A stretch of DNA of 64,000 bases. Source: Selaginella moellendorffii (Eukaryota; Plantae; Lycopodiophyta). Of this stretch, positions 3,087 through 25,276 are shown in pieces (within the stretch, counting starts at the first letter, position 1; each line of letters starts with the position of its first letter). The DNA lies in assembly GCF_000143415.4 (NCBI RefSeq), contig NW_003314395.1, forward strand, positions 186,001-250,000, read 5' to 3'. The translations under genes were made by a program, and so were the position numbers. The notes beneath the pieces are model-generated. The model had not been told where the DNA came from. It did not search any database and saw only the letters and a program-made list of their open reading frames with translations.

Positions 3087-3451
3087 TAAACTCAAAGTCC
3101 TTTCCCTGCAAGCTGCTGATTTTGTTGAGCGGGATGATGAGAGTGCTAAGATGGATCACATGGCCTTGATCGACCAGCAAAACACACTATATATTCTTTA
3201 GATTCCGTGGAATGCCTTGAATCGGTATTTGCCGCACGATAAGCGACTTGCCACAATAAATAATAACATGTATACTTTTCTATAAATAATAACATGTATA
3301 CTTTTCTTTGTTTTGTTCTTACAAGTCAAACTGATTCTGGCATTTTGCTACATGAGCAGCAACGAGAAACAAATCTCTGCAACATGGCAAGTGTCACTTG
3401 ATTTTACATGGGGATCCGATAACCTACAAACAGCTTCTTTGTGTCTTGTTC

Positions 3452-4348
3452 TTACATAATCTTGCAAATCAAGTTCCTGGTAAACAGCTCGCTGGTGTTG
3501 TTCACGATCCAGGGGTGACCAAGAACTTGCTCCACCGTCAGCCTCCGGCTCGGATAAACCTCCAACATCCCCATGATCAAATCCTTTGCCTCGCTCGACA
3601 CATCACTCCAATCCAGTGCAAACTCCACATTGTCCACGCTTTTCAGCAATGACTCCACATAATCAGAGTGGTACTCAGGGAACGCCACCCTTCCGCTAAC
3701 GAGCTCATATAGAATGAGTCCGAGCCCCCAAACGTCCACCGCTTGAGTGTAGTATTTCGGCCATCCGCCCTCACCAGCCCTGAGAACATCTGGCGACATA
3801 TACCCAGGGGTGCCACAAAGGTGGTGCATCTCGTCTGCCCGGTCAGTCGCAACCCCAAAGTCAGACAGCTTCACCTCGTAAGGTTGCGCTGGATGCGTCA
3901 GCAAAACGTTTTCCAGCTTCATATCCCTGTGCACCACCCCAAGGTTGTGCATCTCCCTCAGCGTCTCGGCCAGGCTCTTGGTCACAAACGCCGCCTCGTC
4001 ATCCGCCAGCCTCCCCACCATCTTGAGCCTGTCCCGGAGAGTGCACGAGCAGAGCTCCAAGATTAGGGATCCCCACCAGCGGCCCTTGCGCTCCTCCTCG
4101 ACCATGTCGTAGATCTCTAGTGTACCATGGCAGCCATTGAGTTTGAGCATGATTTCCTTCTCTCTCTCACCCGACCTCTCGAAGCTCTTAGCCGCTAGCA
4201 ACTTACCACCCATTCTAAAGCTTACAAGGTGTACAGTGCCTTGCCCTCCCTTTCCAAGCTCAAAACCCACATCGTACATCTTCCTCAACGACGACAGCTC
4301 CTCGCTCACAACCAACTCACCAGTCTCGACCGCTCTCCACACAGTCAT
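3452..4348 (-). CDS. Minimal intronless CAMK-group (CDPK/PPCK-like) Ser/Thr kinase, copy 1
   Basis: GKGGQG, AAK, HRDMKLEN, DFG, CGTPGYMSPD, DVWGLG and HPW motifs; no EF-hand tail. Confidence 0.9.
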   Translation of the reverse strand: MTVWRAVETGELVVSEELSSLRKMYDVGFELGKGGQGTVHLVSFRMGGKLLAAKSFERSGEREKEIMLKLNGCHGTLEIYDMVEEERKGRWWGSLILELCSCTLRDRLKMVGRLADDEAAFVTKSLAETLREMHNLGVVHRDMKLENVLLTHPAQPYEVKLSDFGVATDRADEMHHLCGTPGYMSPDVLRAGEGGWPKYYTQAVDVWGLGLILYELVSGRVAFPEYHSDYVESLLKSVDNVEFALDWSDVSSEAKDLIMGMLEVYPSRRLTVEQVLGHPWIVNNTSELFTRNLICKIM

Positions 4349-4427
4349 GGCGAGATTAAACAACGATTGTTAGCGTGACCTAAAGGGAACTGCCTTTAAG
4401 TCTTGATCAAACCAGATTGAGTTATGA

Positions 4428-9463: not shown

Positions 9464-9804
9464 TAAACTCAAAGTCCTTCCCCTGCAAGCTGCCGATTTT
9501 GTTGAGCGGGATGATGAAGTGCTAATCTGGATCACATGGCCTTGATCGACCAGCAAAACACATTATATATTCTTTAGATTCCGTGGAATGCCTTGAATCG
9601 GTATTTGCCGCACGATAAGCGACTTGCCACGACTTGCCACAAATAATCATATGTATACGTTTCTTTGTTTTTTTCTTACAAGTCAAACTGATTCTGGCAT
9701 TTTGCTACATGAATAGCATTAAGGGAAACAAATCGCTGCAAACCGGCAAGTGTCACTTGATTTTACATCCAATAACCTACAAACAGTTTCTTTTTGTCTT
9801 GTTC

Positions 9805-10701
9805 TTACATAATCTTGCAAATCAAGTTCCTGGTAAACAGCTCGCTGGTGTTGTTCACGATCCAGGGGTGACCAAGCACTTGCTCCACTGTCAGCCTCCG
9901 GCTCGGATAAACCTCCAACATCCCCATGATCAAATCCTTTGCCTCGCTCGACACATCACTCCAATCCAATGCAAACTCCACATTGTCCACGCTTTTCAGC
10001 AATAACTCCACATAATCAGAGTGGTATTCAGGGAACGCCACCCTTCCGCTAAGGAGCTCATATAGAATGAGTCCGAGCCCCCAAACGTCCACCGCTTGAG
10101 TGTAGTATTTCGGCCATCCGCCCTCACCAGCCCTGAGAACGTCTGGCGACATATACCCAGGGGTGCCACAAAGGTGGTGCATCTCGTCGGCCCGGTCAGT
10201 TGCAACCCCAAAGTCAGACAGCTTCACCTCGTAAGGTTGCGCTGGATGCGTCAGCAAAACGTTTTCCAGCTTCATATCCCTGTGCACCACCCCAAGGTTG
10301 TGCATCTCCCTCAGCGTCTCGGCCAGGCTCTTGGTCACAAACGCCGCCTCGTCATCCGCCAGCCTCCCCACCATCTTGAGCCTGTCCCGGAGAGTGCACG
10401 AGCAGAGCTCCAAGATTAGGGATCCCCACCAGCGGCCCTTGCGCTCCTCCTCGACCATGTCGTAGATCTCTAGTGTACCATGGCAGCCATTGAGTTTGAG
10501 CATGATTTCCTTCTCTCTCTCACCCGACCTCTCGAAGCTCTTAGCCGCTAGCAACTTACCACCCATTCTAAAGCTTACAAGGTGTACAGTGCCTTGCCCT
10601 CCCTTTCCAAGCTCAAAACCCACATCGTACATCTTCCTCAACGACGACAGCTCCTCGCTCACAACCAACTCACCAGTCTCGACCGCTCTCCACACAGTCA
10701 T
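9805..10701 (-). CDS. Minimal intronless CAMK-group Ser/Thr kinase, copy 2
   Basis: Two amino-acid differences from copy 1; all catalytic motifs intact. Confidence 0.9.
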   Translation of the reverse strand: MTVWRAVETGELVVSEELSSLRKMYDVGFELGKGGQGTVHLVSFRMGGKLLAAKSFERSGEREKEIMLKLNGCHGTLEIYDMVEEERKGRWWGSLILELCSCTLRDRLKMVGRLADDEAAFVTKSLAETLREMHNLGVVHRDMKLENVLLTHPAQPYEVKLSDFGVATDRADEMHHLCGTPGYMSPDVLRAGEGGWPKYYTQAVDVWGLGLILYELLSGRVAFPEYHSDYVELLLKSVDNVEFALDWSDVSSEAKDLIMGMLEVYPSRRLTVEQVLGHPWIVNNTSELFTRNLICKIM

Positions 10702-10780
10702 GGCGAGATTAAACAACGATTGTTAGCGTGACCTAAAGGGAACTGCCTTTAAGTCTTGATCAAACCAGATTGAGTTATGA

Positions 10781-20364: not shown

Positions 20365-20522
20365 CGAGGAAAGCATCTGGGCCGTTGGATTGTTTGCCTT
20401 CAAATTAAAAGGAAAATAGGAAAATGGTTTTTTATCGGACGGTGGACGGCTTCTCCGATGTGAAGCCCATCCCGACCGTCGGATTTGTTTCTTAAACCTC
20501 TCTTTGTTTCAAGCTTTTGGCT

Positions 20523-21461
20523 ATGGCGTCCCCATCGTCGCTGTGCGCCGATCTCCGTGGCGCTCGAGCGGCGCCCGCATTGCCGTCGCAAATTTCTTCC
20601 TCCTCCTCCTCGGCCGTGGCGTTTCCTCTGCGCGCGCGGATCGGTGGATCGCTGAGCGTTTCTTCGTCGTCGATCGGACGCAGGGATCTTGGGATTGGCA
20701 AATGTAGCAGCGCAGGAGAGGCGGCGAATGTGGACGTCGAGCAAGTGCCGATCGAGAAGAGTGAGTGGATTTTCCCTCTCGATTTTCGATATTTTCCTTT
20801 GCATGTCCTTGATTTCATGCTCTTTGGATCAGGGTTTGAAGAATTTCCTTCTGTGCTAGACATCAACAAGATCCGGGACATTCTTCCTCACAGGTACAGT
20901 GTTTATACTGTCCTTGGTATTTGTATCTCTCTTGTTTGGCTCTTGTTTTTTCATTTGATCTCTCTTGTTTTGCTCGTAGATATCCATTTTTGCTAGTAGA
21001 CAGAGTGATCGAGTATCAACCCGGTGTCACGGCAGTAGGGATTAAAAACGTGACGATCAATGACAATTTCTTCCCCGGCCACTTTCCGGAGAGACCGATC
21101 ATGCCTGGAGTTCTCATGGTTGAGGTAGAAAACGATGAGACAGAGAATTTTCTTGCGTAGTTCTCATGCTTTTGAAATTTCTGTCCAGGCAATGGCTCAA
21201 GTTGGTGGGCTCGTGATGCTCAAGCCCGAAGCTGGCGGCTCCAAGGAGATTTTTTTCTTTGCGGGCGTGGACAAGGTCCGGTTCCGCAAGCCAGTGATCG
21301 CCGGTGACACTCTGGTGATGAGGATGAACCTCGTCAAGTTCCAGAAGCGATTTGGCATCGTCAAGATGGAAGGCAAGGCGTACGTTGGCAAGAATGTGGT
21401 TTGCGAGGGGGAATTCACCTTGGCAATGGCATCATCAGACGATGAAGCAACCAGCAACTGA
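20523..21461 (+). CDS. fabZ: Plastid 3-hydroxyacyl-ACP dehydratase
   Basis: Transit peptide; ILPHR|[28 protein letters not shown]|AMAQ and [10 protein letters not shown]; 3 introns. Confidence 0.95.
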
Positions 21462-22130: not shown

Positions 22131-22136
22131 TATAAA
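22131..22136 (+). promoter_or_regulatory. TATA box upstream of the isocyanide synthase gene
   Basis: ctTATAAAga about 140 bp upstream of the ATG; AATAAA at 23904 downstream of the stop. Confidence 0.5.
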
Positions 22137-22271
22137 GAAGAAGACGAGGCAAATCCAGCATAGCAATCCAGAATCCCTTTAGCCAGTGCTCTCAGTGATC
22201 TACCACGAGCAATATTGCAAGTTTGGGTTAATACCGAATTCACAGCACTGCTACGTCGATCTATCCATTCT

Positions 22272-23843
22272 ATGGTATCTATGGCCTATCCAAAGGACAA
22301 GATTGCCTTCTTGTATATCCACACAGAGAGTGGCGAGCTTGCCTTCATGTCACAGTCTGCATCGCAATATGTCCCAGTTACCGGCACCCGGAGTGATTTC
22401 ACGTTTTCTTCCATTGTTGCAAGCAGCAGTGCAGAAGATTTAGAGGAGGTCAAGAAAGGCACACGTTCCATTGCTCCGGAGATGAACAGGTACACCATTT
22501 CCATGATTGGAGCTGATTCCCGCACTTCCTGGGAAGGCACAGTCTATGAGAGATACATTGGCAATGGTTTCGAGGGTGTGGTTTTCACCCAGGATCCCAG
22601 CCAGGGTACTCTCCAGGAGGCTAGCGAGATGAGTTATCTGGCCTCTCTCCTGCTGGAAAACAGCGTCATGACCAGGGATTGTCTCCTGGAGCCCTTCACT
22701 TCACACACACCTCAAGAGGTGGACGACATCACCTCCCAAGTTGTGGACATCATCGAGAAGAATTACATCCACTTTCCAAACCACGACCAGTGGTTCACCA
22801 GTGGGGGCAAGCAGAGGTTTGCGGACAAGTTGAGTTACCACGTCGCAAGAAACATTCCGCTCGAGTTCATCTTGCCGGCTTTTCCAGTCAAGTCGTGTAA
22901 TCCTGACAAGACACTGGGAATGTGCCCGGACAAAGCCGAGGAGCTGGCCATTTATTCCATGAAGATCGTGGCCGATCTCATCAAGGCAGTATACCCTCCA
23001 GGCGTGCACTACAACGTCGTCTCGGATGGCCATGTCTTCTCCGATCTCGTCGGCTCTGACGATGCTGCTGTGGAGTCTTATGGCGAGATGTTTTCGGAGA
23101 TGGCACACAACTTGTATCCCGGCTTGGTCAGTTTCTTCCGCCTGGATGAGTTTCTGCTGGACAACCACAGCGAGGACAGCATTACGAAGCTTATATCCAA
23201 CACCACCGTGGAACATCCCGTTGCTACCGAGCTCACCGCCAATGCAGAGAATGCCAGGCGAGCTCTCATGTGCTTGTTTGGATGTGACGAGTCAACTGTC
23301 ACCAAGGAGATCAAGGATGACCCGGAGACTCGCAATCTTTATCGTGGCTTCTCCAGATTCATGCTCGAGGACTTGTACGAACACAAGAGCTGCAAGAACC
23401 TTCCGTCAAAGTCGGCCAAGAAGAAGCTGTGTAGCCAGGTTGCCTTCCTCATGATCCTTAGGAACCGTGCCTTCTCGGCCATGGTGGAGTGGCTCTTCCC
23501 GTTGCAGCTGCGCATCTCCATCCACCCACATCCAAACAGAGGCCCTAAGTATGGCATCAACATCATCCATTCTTCTCTAGTGGCAGCACAGCGATCCTCC
23601 GAGGAGAAGAACTTCCACATCCCAACCCCATGGCACAATGCGGTGGTGGAGCTGGCTGATGGCAAGTTCATGCTGCTGCATTCCAAAGTCATCCGAGGTT
23701 CAAGTGTGCATGCTGGAGAAATGGCATGTGAGCAACTCCAGTTGAGTCAACAGTTGCTTCTCAAGCGTGAAGGCTATAGAATGATGCTGATGAGATATCC
23801 AGATGGTAGACCCAGCCACTACAAGCAAGTCTGCGTCTGCTAA
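22272..23843 (+). CDS. Dit1/PvcA-family isocyanide synthase (pyoverdine/dityrosine biosynthesis domain), intronless, 523 aa
   Basis: FILPAFPVKSCNPDKTLGMCPDKAEELA, VVSDGHVFSDLVG, YRGFSRF, RNRAFS, LRISIHPH, KYGI and IPTPWHN motifs in the family order. Confidence 0.9.
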   Translation: MVSMAYPKDKIAFLYIHTESGELAFMSQSASQYVPVTGTRSDFTFSSIVASSSAEDLEEVKKGTRSIAPEMNRYTISMIGADSRTSWEGTVYERYIGNGFEGVVFTQDPSQGTLQEASEMSYLASLLLENSVMTRDCLLEPFTSHTPQEVDDITSQVVDIIEKNYIHFPNHDQWFTSGGKQRFADKLSYHVARNIPLEFILPAFPVKSCNPDKTLGMCPDKAEELAIYSMKIVADLIKAVYPPGVHYNVVSDGHVFSDLVGSDDAAVESYGEMFSEMAHNLYPGLVSFFRLDEFLLDNHSEDSITKLISNTTVEHPVATELTANAENARRALMCLFGCDESTVTKEIKDDPETRNLYRGFSRFMLEDLYEHKSCKNLPSKSAKKKLCSQVAFLMILRNRAFSAMVEWLFPLQLRISIHPHPNRGPKYGINIIHSSLVAAQRSSEEKNFHIPTPWHNAVVELADGKFMLLHSKVIRGSSVHAGEMACEQLQLSQQLLLKREGYRMMLMRYPDGRPSHYKQVCVC

Positions 23844-24059
23844 GTTGCTGTTTGATTCTTTCAAGGTTTTGAGTAAATTTCCTAAGTCTAAGCCCATTCT
23901 TTTAATAAAAAATGAGTACATACCATTTTTGTTTACTATTGCTATTGCCGCCATGCAGAGACAAGAATAAGATACACCATGTTGATGTCCCTAATGATCA
24001 AAAGAATATCTTCGCCCCTTCAAGTATGATATCCATGCTTTGCATTACCTTATCCTGCA

Positions 24060-24255
24060 AGGAAATATTTGAAAAGATGCCAGAGCGCAATGTGGTCTCC
24101 TGGAACGCTATGTTAACAGCATATGCCGAGAACGGGCAGCTGGAAGATGCGGTTGGTACAACCGGATGTGTTCTCCTGGACGACGCTTTTAGTGGCATAT
24201 TCGGAGGCAAGGAATATTGTCTTTGGGAGTGTGAGGTCCAACAGAAACGTTAAAG
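24060..24255 (+). pseudogene. PLS-class PPR gene fragment
   Basis: IFEKMPERNVVSWNAMLTAYAENG and frameshifted PDVFSWTTLLVAY. Confidence 0.75.
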
Positions 24256-24379: not shown

Positions 24380-25276
24380 ATGACTGTGTGGAGAGCGGTC
24401 GAGACTGGTGAGTTGGTTGTGAGCGAGGAGCTCTCGTCGTTGAGGAAGATGTACGATGTGGGTTTTGAGCTTGGAAAGGGAGGGCAAGGCACTGTACACC
24501 TTGTAAGCTTTAGAATGGGTGGTAAGTTGCTAGCGGCTAAGAGCTTCGAGAGGTCGGGTGAGAGAGAGAAGGAAATCATGCTCAAACTCAACGGTTGCCA
24601 TGGTACACTAGAGATCTACGACATGGTCGAGGAGGAGCGCAAGGGCCGCTGGTGGGGATCCCTAATCTTGGAGCTCTGCTCGTGCACGCTCCGGGACAGG
24701 CTCAAGATGGTGGGGAGGCTGGCGGATGACGAGGCGGCGTTTGTGACCAAGAGCCTGGCCGAGACGCTGAGGGAGATGCACAACCTTGGGGTGGTGCACA
24801 GGGATATGAAGCTGGAAAACGTTTTGCTGACGCATCCAGCGCAACCTTACGAGGTGAAGCTGTCTGACTTTGGGGTTGCGACTGACCGGGCCGACGAGAT
24901 GCACCACCTTTGTGGCACCCCTGGGTATATGTCGCCAGATGTTCTCAGGGCTGGTGAGGGCGGATGGCCGAAATACTACACTCAAGCGGTGGACGTTTGG
25001 GGGCTCGGACTCATTCTATATGAGCTCCTTAGCGGAAGGGTGGCGTTCCCTGAGTACCACTCTGATTATGTGGAGTTATTGCTGAAAAGCGTGGACAATG
25101 TGGAGTTTGCATTGGATTGGAGTGATGTGACGAGCGAGGCAAAGGATTTGATCATGGGGATGTTGGAGGTTTATCCGAGCCGGAGGCTGACGGTGGAGCA
25201 AGTGCTTGGTCACCCCTGGATCGTGAACAACACCAGCGAGCTGTTTACCAGGAACTTTATTTGCAAGATTATGTAA
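24380..25276 (+). CDS. Minimal intronless CAMK-group Ser/Thr kinase, copy 3
   Basis: Near-identical to copies 1 and 2, in inverted orientation. Confidence 0.9.
   Translation: MTVWRAVETGELVVSEELSSLRKMYDVGFELGKGGQGTVHLVSFRMGGKLLAAKSFERSGEREKEIMLKLNGCHGTLEIYDMVEEERKGRWWGSLILELCSCTLRDRLKMVGRLADDEAAFVTKSLAETLREMHNLGVVHRDMKLENVLLTHPAQPYEVKLSDFGVATDRADEMHHLCGTPGYMSPDVLRAGEGGWPKYYTQAVDVWGLGLILYELLSGRVAFPEYHSDYVELLLKSVDNVEFALDWSDVTSEAKDLIMGMLEVYPSRRLTVEQVLGHPWIVNNTSELFTRNFICKIM

What the first reader, a model, noticed from the sequence alone, without database searches (positions are those of the whole stretch)
22272..23843. Intact Dit1/PvcA-type isocyanide synthase in a plant chromosome: candidate horizontally acquired isocyanide/formamide pathway
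Seen: a 523-aa uninterrupted ORF with the family motifs (LPAFPxKSxNxxK, PDxxEELA, SDGHVFSD, RISIH, TPWHN), a TATA box and an AATAAA. It is intronless and sits between intron-bearing plant genes (FabZ, LSD1). Known: this family (yeast Dit1, Pseudomonas PvcA, IsnA, fungal XanB/CrmA) converts an amino-acid amine plus ribulose-5-phosphate into an isocyanide. It is characteristic of bacteria and fungi, not seed plants. The length and the roughly 130-aa N-terminal extension resemble stand-alone fungal Dit1. Inference: a fungus- or microbe-to-lycophyte transfer giving the plant isocyanide (copper-chelating, antimicrobial) or N-formyl-tyrosine wall chemistry. No Dit2-like P450 or PvcB-like dioxygenase is visible in the window.
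Basis: partly seen in the sequence, partly recalled or inferred. Interest (0 to 1): 0.9.

Follow-up and report, generated by a model that had tools for sequence, protein, structure and literature searches.

The report
Fungal-type isocyanide synthase gene in Selaginella
The spikemoss Selaginella moellendorffii carries an intact, weakly transcribed Dit1-type isocyanide synthase gene, one of a family most likely acquired long ago from a fungus, so this plant may make isocyanide or N-formyl amino-acid compounds that I do not know from land plants.

Summary
Window 22272-23843 (+) is an uninterrupted 523-codon ORF, or 520 from the second ATG.

The window is Selaginella moellendorffii. The gene is 98% identical to the RefSeq model named 'spore wall maturation protein DIT1' and lies in the same order: FabZ, ICS, kinase, LSD1.

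It is a real plant gene, not a contaminant:
- two collinear haplotypes at 97% nucleotide identity;
- spliced plant neighbours;
- host-like GC3;
- sense-strand RNA reads at about 1-2% of FabZ depth.

It belongs to a Selaginella family with at least eight intact copies under purifying selection (dN/dS 0.12-0.23).

ML trees place the family inside the fungal Dit1 clade (100/99) and next to chytrids (83/89). An AU test against nesting gives p 0.066, so nesting is not proven.

New here: the two earliest-branching paralogues keep a phase-1 intron at exactly the site of a conserved fungal Dit1 intron. The window copy has lost it.

The N-terminal extension is predicted to be PAS-like.

No Dit2 P450 lies in the window or beside the paralogues examined.

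Product and activity are untested.

The scan found this family before on other DNA of this genome (s1-366111, s1-358600).

The parts
22131..22136 (+). TATAAA, 141 nt upstream of the first ATG; a candidate TATA box
   Evidence: Conserved in the other haplotype. The transcription start is not mapped. The furthest 5' RNA contig starts at 22256.
22272..23843 (+). Intronless CDS of a Dit1-type isocyanide synthase: 523 aa, or 520 aa from the alternative start at 22281
22281..22601 (+). N-terminal PAS-like domain (aa 4-110), followed by a helical linker to about aa 145
   Evidence: AF2 model: pLDDT 87, pTM 0.89. VIA-align to PAS-B and LOV2 domains: Z 11-12, rmsd 2.1-2.3 A over about 100 residues. Foldseek probability 1.00. 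Pfam sees nothing here.
22707..23831 (+). Catalytic isocyanide-synthase fold (aa 146-520). The Pfam DIT1_PvcA match covers aa 188-475 (nt 22833-23696).
   Evidence: PvcA 3e59 Z 31.9 and PIsnA 9dh4/9dhm Z 31.4-31.6, rmsd 2.4-2.5 A, 300-307 residues aligned. Sequence matches to PDB chains. All 53 columns invariant across 48 Dit1-type proteins are kept.
23049..23050 (+). Site of a lost intron: phase 1, inside codon V260, directly after SDGHVFSDL
   Evidence: Paralogues P0005 and P0006 have a 57- or 55-nt GT..AG intron exactly here. Fungal Dit1 genes of Powellomyces, Geranomyces, Phlyctochytrium, Cladochytrium and Coccidioides have an intron at the same site and phase.
23799..23822 (+). C-terminal PDGRPSHY tail, shared with the aligned chytrid homologues but not with the aligned Dikarya Dit1
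   Evidence: Alignment A1; coordinates.
23904..23909 (+). AATAAA, 61 nt after the stop; a candidate poly(A) signal
   Evidence: RNA contig coverage ends near 23806. The 3' end is not mapped.
20484..21461 (+). Upstream neighbour: 3' part of the FabZ/FabA-type dehydratase gene, a spliced and well-expressed plant gene
   Evidence: Introns 20761-20832, 20892-20977 and 21123-21186 in RNA reads, depth 85-131. Pfam FabA on the allelic model.
24380..25276 (+). Downstream neighbour: intronless 298-aa protein kinase, one of three near-identical copies in the window
   Evidence: Pfam Pkinase E 5.7e-47. Copies at 3419-4353 and 9772-10706, about 96% nt identity. No reads in the runs laid.

Best explanation
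Window 22272-23843 encodes a functional-looking member of the Dit1 branch of the DIT1_PvcA isocyanide synthase family. It sits in the nuclear genome of Selaginella moellendorffii.

Origin (inferred). An intron-bearing Dit1-type gene passed as genomic DNA from a fungus into an ancestor of this plant. The donor was most likely a chytrid-like lineage. The gene then adopted host composition and multiplied into a family of dispersed and tandem copies. In the subclade that holds the window copy, it lost its last fungal intron.

Mechanism (inferred from the family, not shown here). The C-terminal PvcA/IsnA-fold domain condenses the alpha-amino group of an amino acid with ribulose-5-phosphate to give an isonitrile. 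Tyrosine is the substrate in Dit1, PvcA and PIsnA. As reported for yeast Dit1, the recovered product may instead be the N-formyl amino acid. A PAS-like N-terminal domain, shared by the aligned fungal Dit1-type proteins, may bind a ligand or a partner.

No Dit2-type P450 accompanies the gene, so a yeast-style bisformyl-dityrosine pathway is not supported. A free isocyanide or formamide metabolite with a metal-binding or antimicrobial role is the more likely output.
For: Family:
- Pfam PF05141 at E 5e-82.
- PDB sequence hits to PIsnA and PvcA.
- Predicted fold Z 31-32 to 3e59, 9dh4 and 9dhm.
- All invariant family columns are kept.

Host residence:
- 98% identity to the annotated S. moellendorffii DIT1 on a 3.15-Mb scaffold with the same neighbours.
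- 97% nucleotide collinearity over more than 17 kb around the gene.
- Spliced FabZ and LSD1 reads on the flanks, and about 50% allelic SNPs in the RNA reads.
- GC3 of 0.65, within the neighbours' range of 0.52-0.72.

Selection: dN/dS is 0.12-0.23 among eight intact copies, with dS up to about 1.1.

Transcription: sense-strand stranded reads at depth 0.3-2.5, and RNA contigs at depth 3-10.

Fungal origin:
- The nearest non-plant hits are chytrids at 34-43% identity.
- Careful ML tree: Dit1 fungi plus Selaginella 100/99; Dikarya 96/89; chytrids plus Selaginella 83/89.
- Quick tree with 71 rows: chytrids plus Selaginella, SH-aLRT 97.
- The N-terminal PKD..F.Y start and the C-terminal PDGRPSHY tail are shared with chytrids.
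- Phase-1 intron at the identical site in Selaginella P0005 and P0006 and in five fungal genes.
- The intron-bearing paralogues branch first. The intronless clade has 100/97 support.
Against: - The AU test does not reject a tree in which all fungi form one clade without Selaginella (delta lnL 10.9, p 0.066). Nesting inside fungi, and the chytrid donor in particular, are favoured but not proven.
- The shared intron also occurs in an ascomycete. It argues for a fungal donor, not specifically a chytrid one.
- Other Selaginella species, lycophytes and ferns could not be searched as genomes here. The age and spread of the family in plants are unknown.
- Expression of this copy is very low in the runs read.
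- No activity, product or partner enzyme is shown.
- One paper disputes that yeast Dit1 is a true isocyanide synthase (PMC7345447).
Confidence: 0.78

Rival explanations
1. The donor was a fungus other than a chytrid (a Dikarya or an extinct or unsampled lineage), or Selaginella is sister to all sampled fungal Dit1. The chytrid affinity would then be a sampling or long-branch effect.
For: AU p 0.066 for fungi as one clade without Selaginella. Support for chytrids plus Selaginella is only 83/89. The Selaginella stem branch is long, about 1.0. The conserved intron is also present in Coccidioides.
Against: Both trees place Selaginella with chytrids, and Dikarya are monophyletic at 96/89. The best hits are all chytrids. 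Terminal sequence signatures are shared with the aligned chytrids only.
Confidence: 0.15
2. Vertical inheritance of an ancient eukaryotic Dit1-type gene, lost in nearly all other Archaeplastida.
For: Other plant genomes could not be surveyed directly. The two EukProt protist sequences show the family exists in some protists.
Against: Among the 120 best hits listed from a 5.8-billion-protein collection that draws on NCBI nr, UniRef and EukProt, the only plant is S. moellendorffii. The hits above 60% identity whose source I looked up are S. moellendorffii fragments. The protist sequences fall outside the fungi plus Selaginella clade, which has 100/99 support. The scenario would need very many independent losses.
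Confidence: 0.04
3. Contaminating fungal DNA or a misassembly, not a plant gene.
For: None found.
Against: Two independent haplotype sequences are collinear at 97% across the gene and both flanks. The gene lies 810 bp from the FabZ stop and 537 bp from the kinase start. Copies occur on at least six large scaffolds. Composition is host-like. Only 34-43% identity to any fungus.
Confidence: 0.01
4. The window copy is a redundant or decaying duplicate without its own function. Its low transcript level would reflect silencing.
For: Depth is about 1-2% of FabZ in two RNA runs. There are many paralogues, some clearly degenerate, such as P0007, P0010, P0014 and P0044.
Against: The ORF is intact in both haplotypes, with dN/dS 0.12 between them and 0.14-0.21 to paralogues. 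All invariant residues are kept. Only a few samples were read, so tissue- or stress-specific expression is not excluded.
Confidence: 0.1

Closest known systems
Fungal Dit1 (S. cerevisiae spore wall maturation protein Dit1; the 'dit superfamily' of Nickles et al. 2023, PMC10153163)
   Same: Same clade in the tree (100/99). Same length class and N-terminal extension. The same conserved intron site occurs in older Selaginella paralogues. The catalytic motifs are identical.
   Different: 30-32% identity to the three Dikarya Dit1 aligned. No adjacent Dit2 P450 or Dtr1-type MFS in the window or at the seven paralogue loci examined. The host is a vascular plant. The family is expanded to many copies.
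Chytrid DIT1_PvcA proteins (Blyttiomyces, Phlyctochytrium, Powellomyces, Geranomyces, Cladochytrium)
   Same: Best non-plant hits at 34-43% identity. Sister position in the trees. Shared start M-x-(Y/F)PKD and tail (P/S/T)(D/K)GRPSHY. Shared intron.
   Different: The chytrid genes keep 2-4 introns within the Dit1 part and sit in clusters. In Spizellomycetales the cluster holds an OPT transporter, an AMP-binding enzyme and a beta-lactamase-family protein. In Cladochytrium it holds a P450 and an MFS transporter. None of these partners flanks the Selaginella genes.
Bacterial isonitrile synthases PvcA (3e59), PIsnA (9dh4/9dhm) and IsnA
   Same: Same catalytic fold: Z 31-32, rmsd 2.4-2.5 A. 24-30% identity. 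The same motif set aligns.
   Different: The bacterial enzymes are about 305-330 aa with no PAS-like N-domain. The NCBIfam PvcA equivalog model scores 121.7 against a cut-off of 600, so this is not a PvcA orthologue. No PvcB/IsnB TauD-type dioxygenase partner is present.
Other documented microbe-to-Selaginella gene families, e.g. microbial-type terpene synthase-like genes (from my own knowledge, not checked here)
   Same: A lineage-restricted, expanded family of specialised-metabolism genes of microbial type in a non-seed plant.
   Different: A different enzyme class. For the ICS family, an inherited fungal intron marks the donor as a eukaryote.

Membership tests
DIT1_PvcA isocyanide synthase family (PF05141) | Significant match to the Pfam model above its gathering score | tested here: met
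   275.8 bits against 26.4, E 5.4e-82, model positions 2-266 of 273.
DIT1_PvcA isocyanide synthase family (PF05141) | Conserved motif residues (LPAFPxKSxN..K, PDxxEE, SDGHVFSD, RxSIHxH, PTPWHN) | tested here: met
   All 53 columns invariant in 48 Dit1-type proteins are kept. Motif positions. Which of these residues are catalytic could not be taken from a paper here.
DIT1_PvcA isocyanide synthase family (PF05141) | PvcA/IsnA three-dimensional fold | tested here: met
   The predicted model matches 3e59, 9dh4 and 9dhm at Z 31.4-31.9 over 300-307 residues. This is a prediction, not a solved structure.
DIT1_PvcA isocyanide synthase family (PF05141) | Catalysis: amino acid plus ribulose-5-phosphate gives an isonitrile (or N-formyl amino acid) | not testable with these tools
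   Needs an enzyme assay or metabolite analysis.
PvcA equivalog (NCBIfam NF045653, L-tyrosine isonitrile synthase) | Score above the equivalog cut-off | tested here: not met
   121.7 bits against a cut-off of 600. It is a relative, not a PvcA orthologue.
Fungal Dit1 clade ('dit superfamily') | Phylogenetic placement within the Dit1 clade, apart from other fungal ICS classes and from bacteria | tested here: met
   Support 100/99 in the careful tree. The other fungal ICS class (Asc2) and the bacterial rows fall outside in the 71-row tree.
Fungal Dit1 clade ('dit superfamily') | Co-located Dit2 (CYP56-type P450), stated to be a core gene of all dit clusters (PMC10153163) | tested here: not met
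   No P450 hit among the 10 window ORFs scanned, out of 53 of 150 aa or more. The region allelic to about window 12-34 kb has no P450 gene model. No P450 within 10 kb of seven paralogue loci. A Dit2-like gene elsewhere in the genome could not be searched for.
Fungal Dit1 clade ('dit superfamily') | Conserved intron after SDGHVFSD(L/C), phase 1 | tested here: not met
   The window copy is intronless. The intron is present in paralogues P0005 and P0006 and in five of the six fungal genes examined. This is read as a secondary loss.
Horizontally acquired plant gene | Physical integration in the host chromosome | tested here: met
Horizontally acquired plant gene | Nested within the donor group, with the alternative rejected | tested here: inconclusive
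   Nested with 83/89 support and SH-aLRT 97, but AU p 0.066.
Horizontally acquired plant gene | Absent from related plant lineages | tested here: inconclusive
   No other plant appears among the 120 best protein hits. The named hits above 60% identity in the representative search are S. moellendorffii. Unannotated plant genomes and other Selaginella species were not searchable.

The most novel reading that the evidence does not exclude
A vascular plant uses an expanded, selection-maintained family of fungus-derived Dit1-type synthases, each with a PAS-like N-terminal domain, to make isocyanide or N-formyl amino-acid metabolites. This compound class is not, to my knowledge, described from land plants. 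An inherited fungal spliceosomal intron documents a eukaryote-to-plant transfer of genomic DNA.
Probability: 0.45. Interest if true: 0.8.

Novelty: new member of a known kind. Interest (0 to 1): 0.62.

Why it matters
Isocyanide synthases are known from bacteria and fungi. Their products chelate copper, kill competitors or build spore walls. A selection-maintained, multi-copy family in a lycophyte would add a new class of nitrogen chemistry to plant specialised metabolism.

It would also be a well-marked case of fungus-to-plant gene transfer. The retained intron shows that the donor DNA was eukaryotic and genomic, which is rarely demonstrable.

It gives a direct handle for experiments: eight intact genes to express, and a model plant with a small genome.

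The gene models are already in RefSeq under a homology-derived name. The full-text library searched holds no paper that links Selaginella with this family. Subscription journals are not covered.

Tried and rejected
A second protein search gave two named bacteria (Iodobacter, a Pyrinomonadaceae MAG). Unnamed short bacterial-type sequences made up the rest of the outgroup.
- Naming of short representatives: 8 of 10 carry no name.
- Papers on the ICS mechanism or the PIsnA structure: none in the library. No catalytic-residue list could be cited, so family-invariant columns were used instead.
- Conserved partner gene: the roughly 575-aa divergent neighbours of P0005 and P0006 looked like a possible shared partner. 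They are unrelated to each other: one looks by eye like a repeat protein, the other like a P-loop protein. Rejected.
- My first intron-mapping script returned nothing because of a bug. I replaced it with block matching.
- A Dit2 search in Selaginella was not run. The protein search lists only 120 hits, and fungal CYP56 sequences would fill that list, so a blank would mean nothing.
- Degenerate or partial Selaginella models (P0007, P0010, P0014, P0044, P0123, P0149, P0165, P0193) were left out of the trees. For the careful tree I also dropped the Asc2 class, two long bacterial rows, the environmental rows, two redundant ascomycetes and the near-identical allele P0001.
Full report
**Observation.** The ORF listing gives one long ORF at 22215..23843 (+). 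Its first ATG is at 22272, which gives 523 aa.
- Pfam scores it as DIT1_PvcA: E 5.4e-82, 275.8 bits, aa 188-475.
- The NCBIfam PvcA equivalog model matches far below its cut-off, 121.7 against 600.
- The only solved relatives by sequence are the isonitrile synthases PIsnA (9dh4, 9dhm) and PvcA (3e59).
- A second ATG at 22281 gives M-A-Y-P-K-D. The RefSeq model, the paralogues and the chytrid homologues all begin there, so the true product may be 520 aa.

**Whose genome, and is the gene really in it?** The best protein hit is 98% identical: 'spore wall maturation protein DIT1 [Selaginella moellendorffii]'.
- That gene lies on the 3.15-Mb scaffold GL377574.1 in the order FabA/FabZ, DIT1, Pkinase, zf-LSD1. 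The window has the same order.
- The window and that scaffold are collinear at 97.0-97.3% nucleotide identity on both sides of the gene. dS between the two alleles is 0.055. I read these as two haplotypes or assemblies of one species.
- Stranded RNA reads show FabZ spliced at three GT..AG introns at depth 85-131. They carry about 50% alternative alleles at several sites. LSD1 is spliced on the other strand.
- The ICS ORF has GC 0.52 and GC3 0.65, inside the range of its neighbours (GC3 0.52-0.72).
- Contamination or misassembly is therefore excluded for practical purposes.

**Transcription.** In two stranded raw-read runs, about 12% of each read, the ORF is covered on the sense strand at depth 0.3-2.5, without any joint. 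In two older runs, whose spliced FabZ contigs show that they are RNA, contigs of depth 3-10 cover parts of the ORF. The gene is transcribed and intronless, at roughly 1-2% of the FabZ level in these samples. Transcript ends were not resolved.

**A family, not a single gene.** The protein search returns further S. moellendorffii proteins at 86, 86, 86, 77 and 71% identity, plus degenerate or partial models at 49-61%. Fragments also turn up in the representative search.
- Copies lie on at least six scaffolds. One is a tandem pair 14 kb apart, and another is a divergent head-to-head pair.
- Eight intact coding sequences give pairwise dN/dS of 0.12-0.23, with dS from 0.29 to 1.15 between paralogues. 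That indicates old duplications under purifying selection.
- No P450 lies within 10 kb of any of the seven loci examined.
- P0005 has two plant-type 2OG-Fe(II) oxygenase genes 3.7 and 8.2 kb downstream. This may be chance.

**Origin.** The nearest non-plant proteins are all from chytrid fungi (Blyttiomyces, Cladochytrium, Zopfochytrium, Phlyctochytrium, Powellomyces, Geranomyces) at 34-43% identity. Dikarya Dit1 follow at about 33-42%.
- An exhaustive HMMER scan of 1.84 billion representatives gives the same order. Every hit above 60% identity whose source I looked up is a S. moellendorffii fragment.
- A 71-row quick tree rooted on bacterial-type sequences puts the Selaginella clade (SH-aLRT 100) inside a chytrid clade (97).
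- A 47-row careful tree (LG+C20 PMSF, ultrafast bootstrap/SH-aLRT) gives:
  - Dit1-type fungi plus Selaginella, 100/99;
  - Dikarya, 96/89;
  - chytrids plus Selaginella, 83/89;
  - Selaginella sister to Blyttiomyces plus Spizellomycetales, 83/87.
- The AU test of the alternative 'all fungi one clade, Selaginella outside' is 10.9 lnL worse, with p 0.066. Nesting is favoured but not formally established.
- Two sequence signatures are independent of the tree: the start M-x-(Y/F)-P-K-D...F-x-Y, and the C-terminal tail P-D-G-R-P-S-H-Y. Selaginella and the aligned chytrids share them, but the aligned Dikarya do not.

**The intron.** This is the strongest new evidence.
- P0005 and P0006 are interrupted by a canonical GT..AG intron of 57 and 55 nt. 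It is phase 1 and lies directly after SDGHVFSDL.
- The Dit1 genes of Powellomyces, Geranomyces, Phlyctochytrium, Cladochytrium and the ascomycete Coccidioides each have a phase-1 intron at exactly this nucleotide position (CT[C/A] N|GT...AG|T[T/G] GG). The basidiomycete Violaceomyces lacks it.
- By my estimate, a randomly gained intron would hit one of the few conserved fungal sites in a 1.5-kb CDS with a probability of a few per thousand.
- In the careful tree P0006 and P0005 branch first, and the intronless genes form a derived clade with 100/97 support.
- The simplest reading is that genomic DNA of an intron-bearing fungal gene was transferred. The other fungal introns were lost early, and the last one was lost in the ancestor of the window's subclade.
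- In the window the former intron site lies between 23049 and 23050.
It reflects secondary loss, not a bacterial or processed origin.
- The intron rules out a bacterial donor. Because Coccidioides also has it, it does not by itself single out chytrids.

**Architecture.** An AlphaFold2 model built on a 48-sequence alignment has pLDDT 87 and pTM 0.89.
- Residues 146-520 superpose on PvcA and PIsnA at Z 31.4-31.9, rmsd 2.4-2.5 A, with 300-307 residues aligned.
- Residues 4-110 superpose on PAS-B and LOV2 domains at Z 11-12, rmsd 2.1-2.3 A, over about 100 residues. That covers whole PAS domains.
- The 'N-terminal extension' of Dit1-type enzymes is thus predicted to be a PAS-like domain plus a helical linker. 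Pfam does not see it.
- All 53 columns that are invariant across 48 Dit1-type proteins are kept in the window protein.

**Function.** From the family, the enzyme should couple an amino acid's amino group with ribulose-5-phosphate to form an isonitrile. This is established for IsnA and PvcA (my own knowledge). PDB titles show PIsnA bound to L-tyrosine and to an isonitrile product.
- For yeast Dit1 the recovered product is N-formyl-tyrosine. One paper argues that Dit1 does not perform isocyanidation, because PvcA cannot replace it (PMC7345447). Nickles et al. treat it as an ICS, and regard Dit2 as a core gene of every dit cluster (PMC10153163).
- Gene neighbourhoods differ among fungi. Cladochytrium and Coccidioides have a P450 and an MFS transporter next to Dit1. 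The Spizellomycetales, the sampled fungi closest to Selaginella, have an OPT transporter, an AMP-binding enzyme and a beta-lactamase-family protein, and no P450.
- Selaginella has none of these next to its copies. A bisformyl-dityrosine wall pathway is therefore unsupported. The RefSeq name 'spore wall maturation protein' is homology transfer only.
- I commit to 'amino-acid isonitrile or N-formyl amino-acid synthase that feeds a soluble specialised metabolite' at about 55-60%. Substrate, product and biological role are open.

**Known or new.** The gene models exist in RefSeq. In the searchable full-text library no paper links Selaginella with isocyanide synthase, Dit1 (the only co-occurrences concern a dicarboxylate transporter) or dityrosine biosynthesis. 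Broader queries showed none among the papers listed. The large fungal ICS survey covers fungi only and does not mention chytrids. Subscription journals are not covered.
- The scan itself had already flagged and followed up other copies of this family in the same genome, with the same reading (s1-366111, s1-358600).
  - the allelic and synteny proof for this copy;
  - the selection analysis;
  - the AU test, with its honest limit;
  - the conserved fungal intron;
  - the PAS-like domain;
  - the contrast of gene neighbourhoods among fungi.

**Verdict.** The finding is real, correctly identified and correctly interpreted in outline. It is a new host lineage for a known enzyme family, through a well-marked fungus-to-plant transfer. 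The chemistry is untested.

Noticed in passing
window 22281-22601 (aa 4-110 of the ICS): The N-terminal extension of Dit1-type synthases is predicted to fold as a PAS-like domain (Z 11-12 to HIF2a/ARNT PAS-B and LOV2), followed by a J-alpha-like helix. Pfam does not detect it. The aligned fungal Dit1-type proteins have an N-terminal extension that aligns here. The bacterial-type enzymes are only about 300-330 aa and lack it.
   Followed up: partly
window 3452-4363 (-), 9805-10716 (-), 24380-25276 (+): Three near-identical (about 96% nt) intronless genes for minimal protein kinases of about 300 aa. The copy next to the ICS had no RNA reads in the runs laid. A kinase also lies 3.3 kb from the P0004 ICS pair (L005 5676-6734). 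An earlier scan note (s1-392243) describes a triplicated module with such a kinase at the window's left edge.
   Followed up: partly
window 23940-24216: About 260 bp between the ICS and the kinase has no counterpart in the other haplotype (L001 11660-11681). It encodes a PPR-like fragment (..NVVSWNAMLTAYAENGQLEDA..). RNA contigs here have high depth and loose ends, as expected for a repeated PPR sequence.
   Followed up: no
L006 15331-16510 and 19821-20999 (S. moellendorffii GL377601.1): Two plant-type 2OG-Fe(II) oxygenase genes (DIOX_N plus 2OG-FeII_Oxy) lie 3.7 and 8.2 kb downstream of the intron-bearing paralogue P0005. This may be a recruited tailoring enzyme or chance. Bacterial ICS partners are TauD-type, a different family.
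   Followed up: no
L008, L009, L010 (Powellomyces, Geranomyces, Phlyctochytrium): In Spizellomycetales the Dit1-type gene sits in a conserved neighbourhood. An OPT oligopeptide transporter lies upstream on the opposite strand at all three loci, directly adjacent in two. An AMP-binding enzyme and a beta-lactamase-family protein are present at two of the three loci (not Powellomyces). In Geranomyces there is also an NRPS-like gene. There is no P450. This looks like a candidate chytrid ICS gene cluster that I have not seen described.
   Followed up: no
L011 3899-9247 (Cladochytrium tenue) and L012 278-7857 (Coccidioides posadasii): The classical dit1 / P450 / MFS-transporter arrangement is present in a chytrid (Cladochytriales; Dit1 is modelled as fused to the MFS) as well as in an ascomycete. 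The dit cluster is therefore older than Dikarya.
   Followed up: no
L008-L012, fungal Dit1 genes: Two further intron positions (after ..EMI[QKLM] | RN.., and after ..SIHP | H..) are conserved among the four fungi in which they occur: Powellomyces, Phlyctochytrium, Cladochytrium and Coccidioides. The second is also kept in the basidiomycete Violaceomyces. Geranomyces lacks both. Both are absent from all Selaginella copies examined.
   Followed up: partly
window 20545-21383 (FabZ): RNA reads show the alternative base at about half of the depth at several FabZ positions. This suggests both haplotypes are expressed about equally.
   Followed up: no
L007 7964-9610 (-): A 548-aa intronless ORF with a P-loop motif (GHPGTGKS), inside a 573-aa gene model with no Pfam hit on record, lies head-to-head with paralogue P0006. 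It is unrelated to the neighbour of P0005.
   Followed up: no
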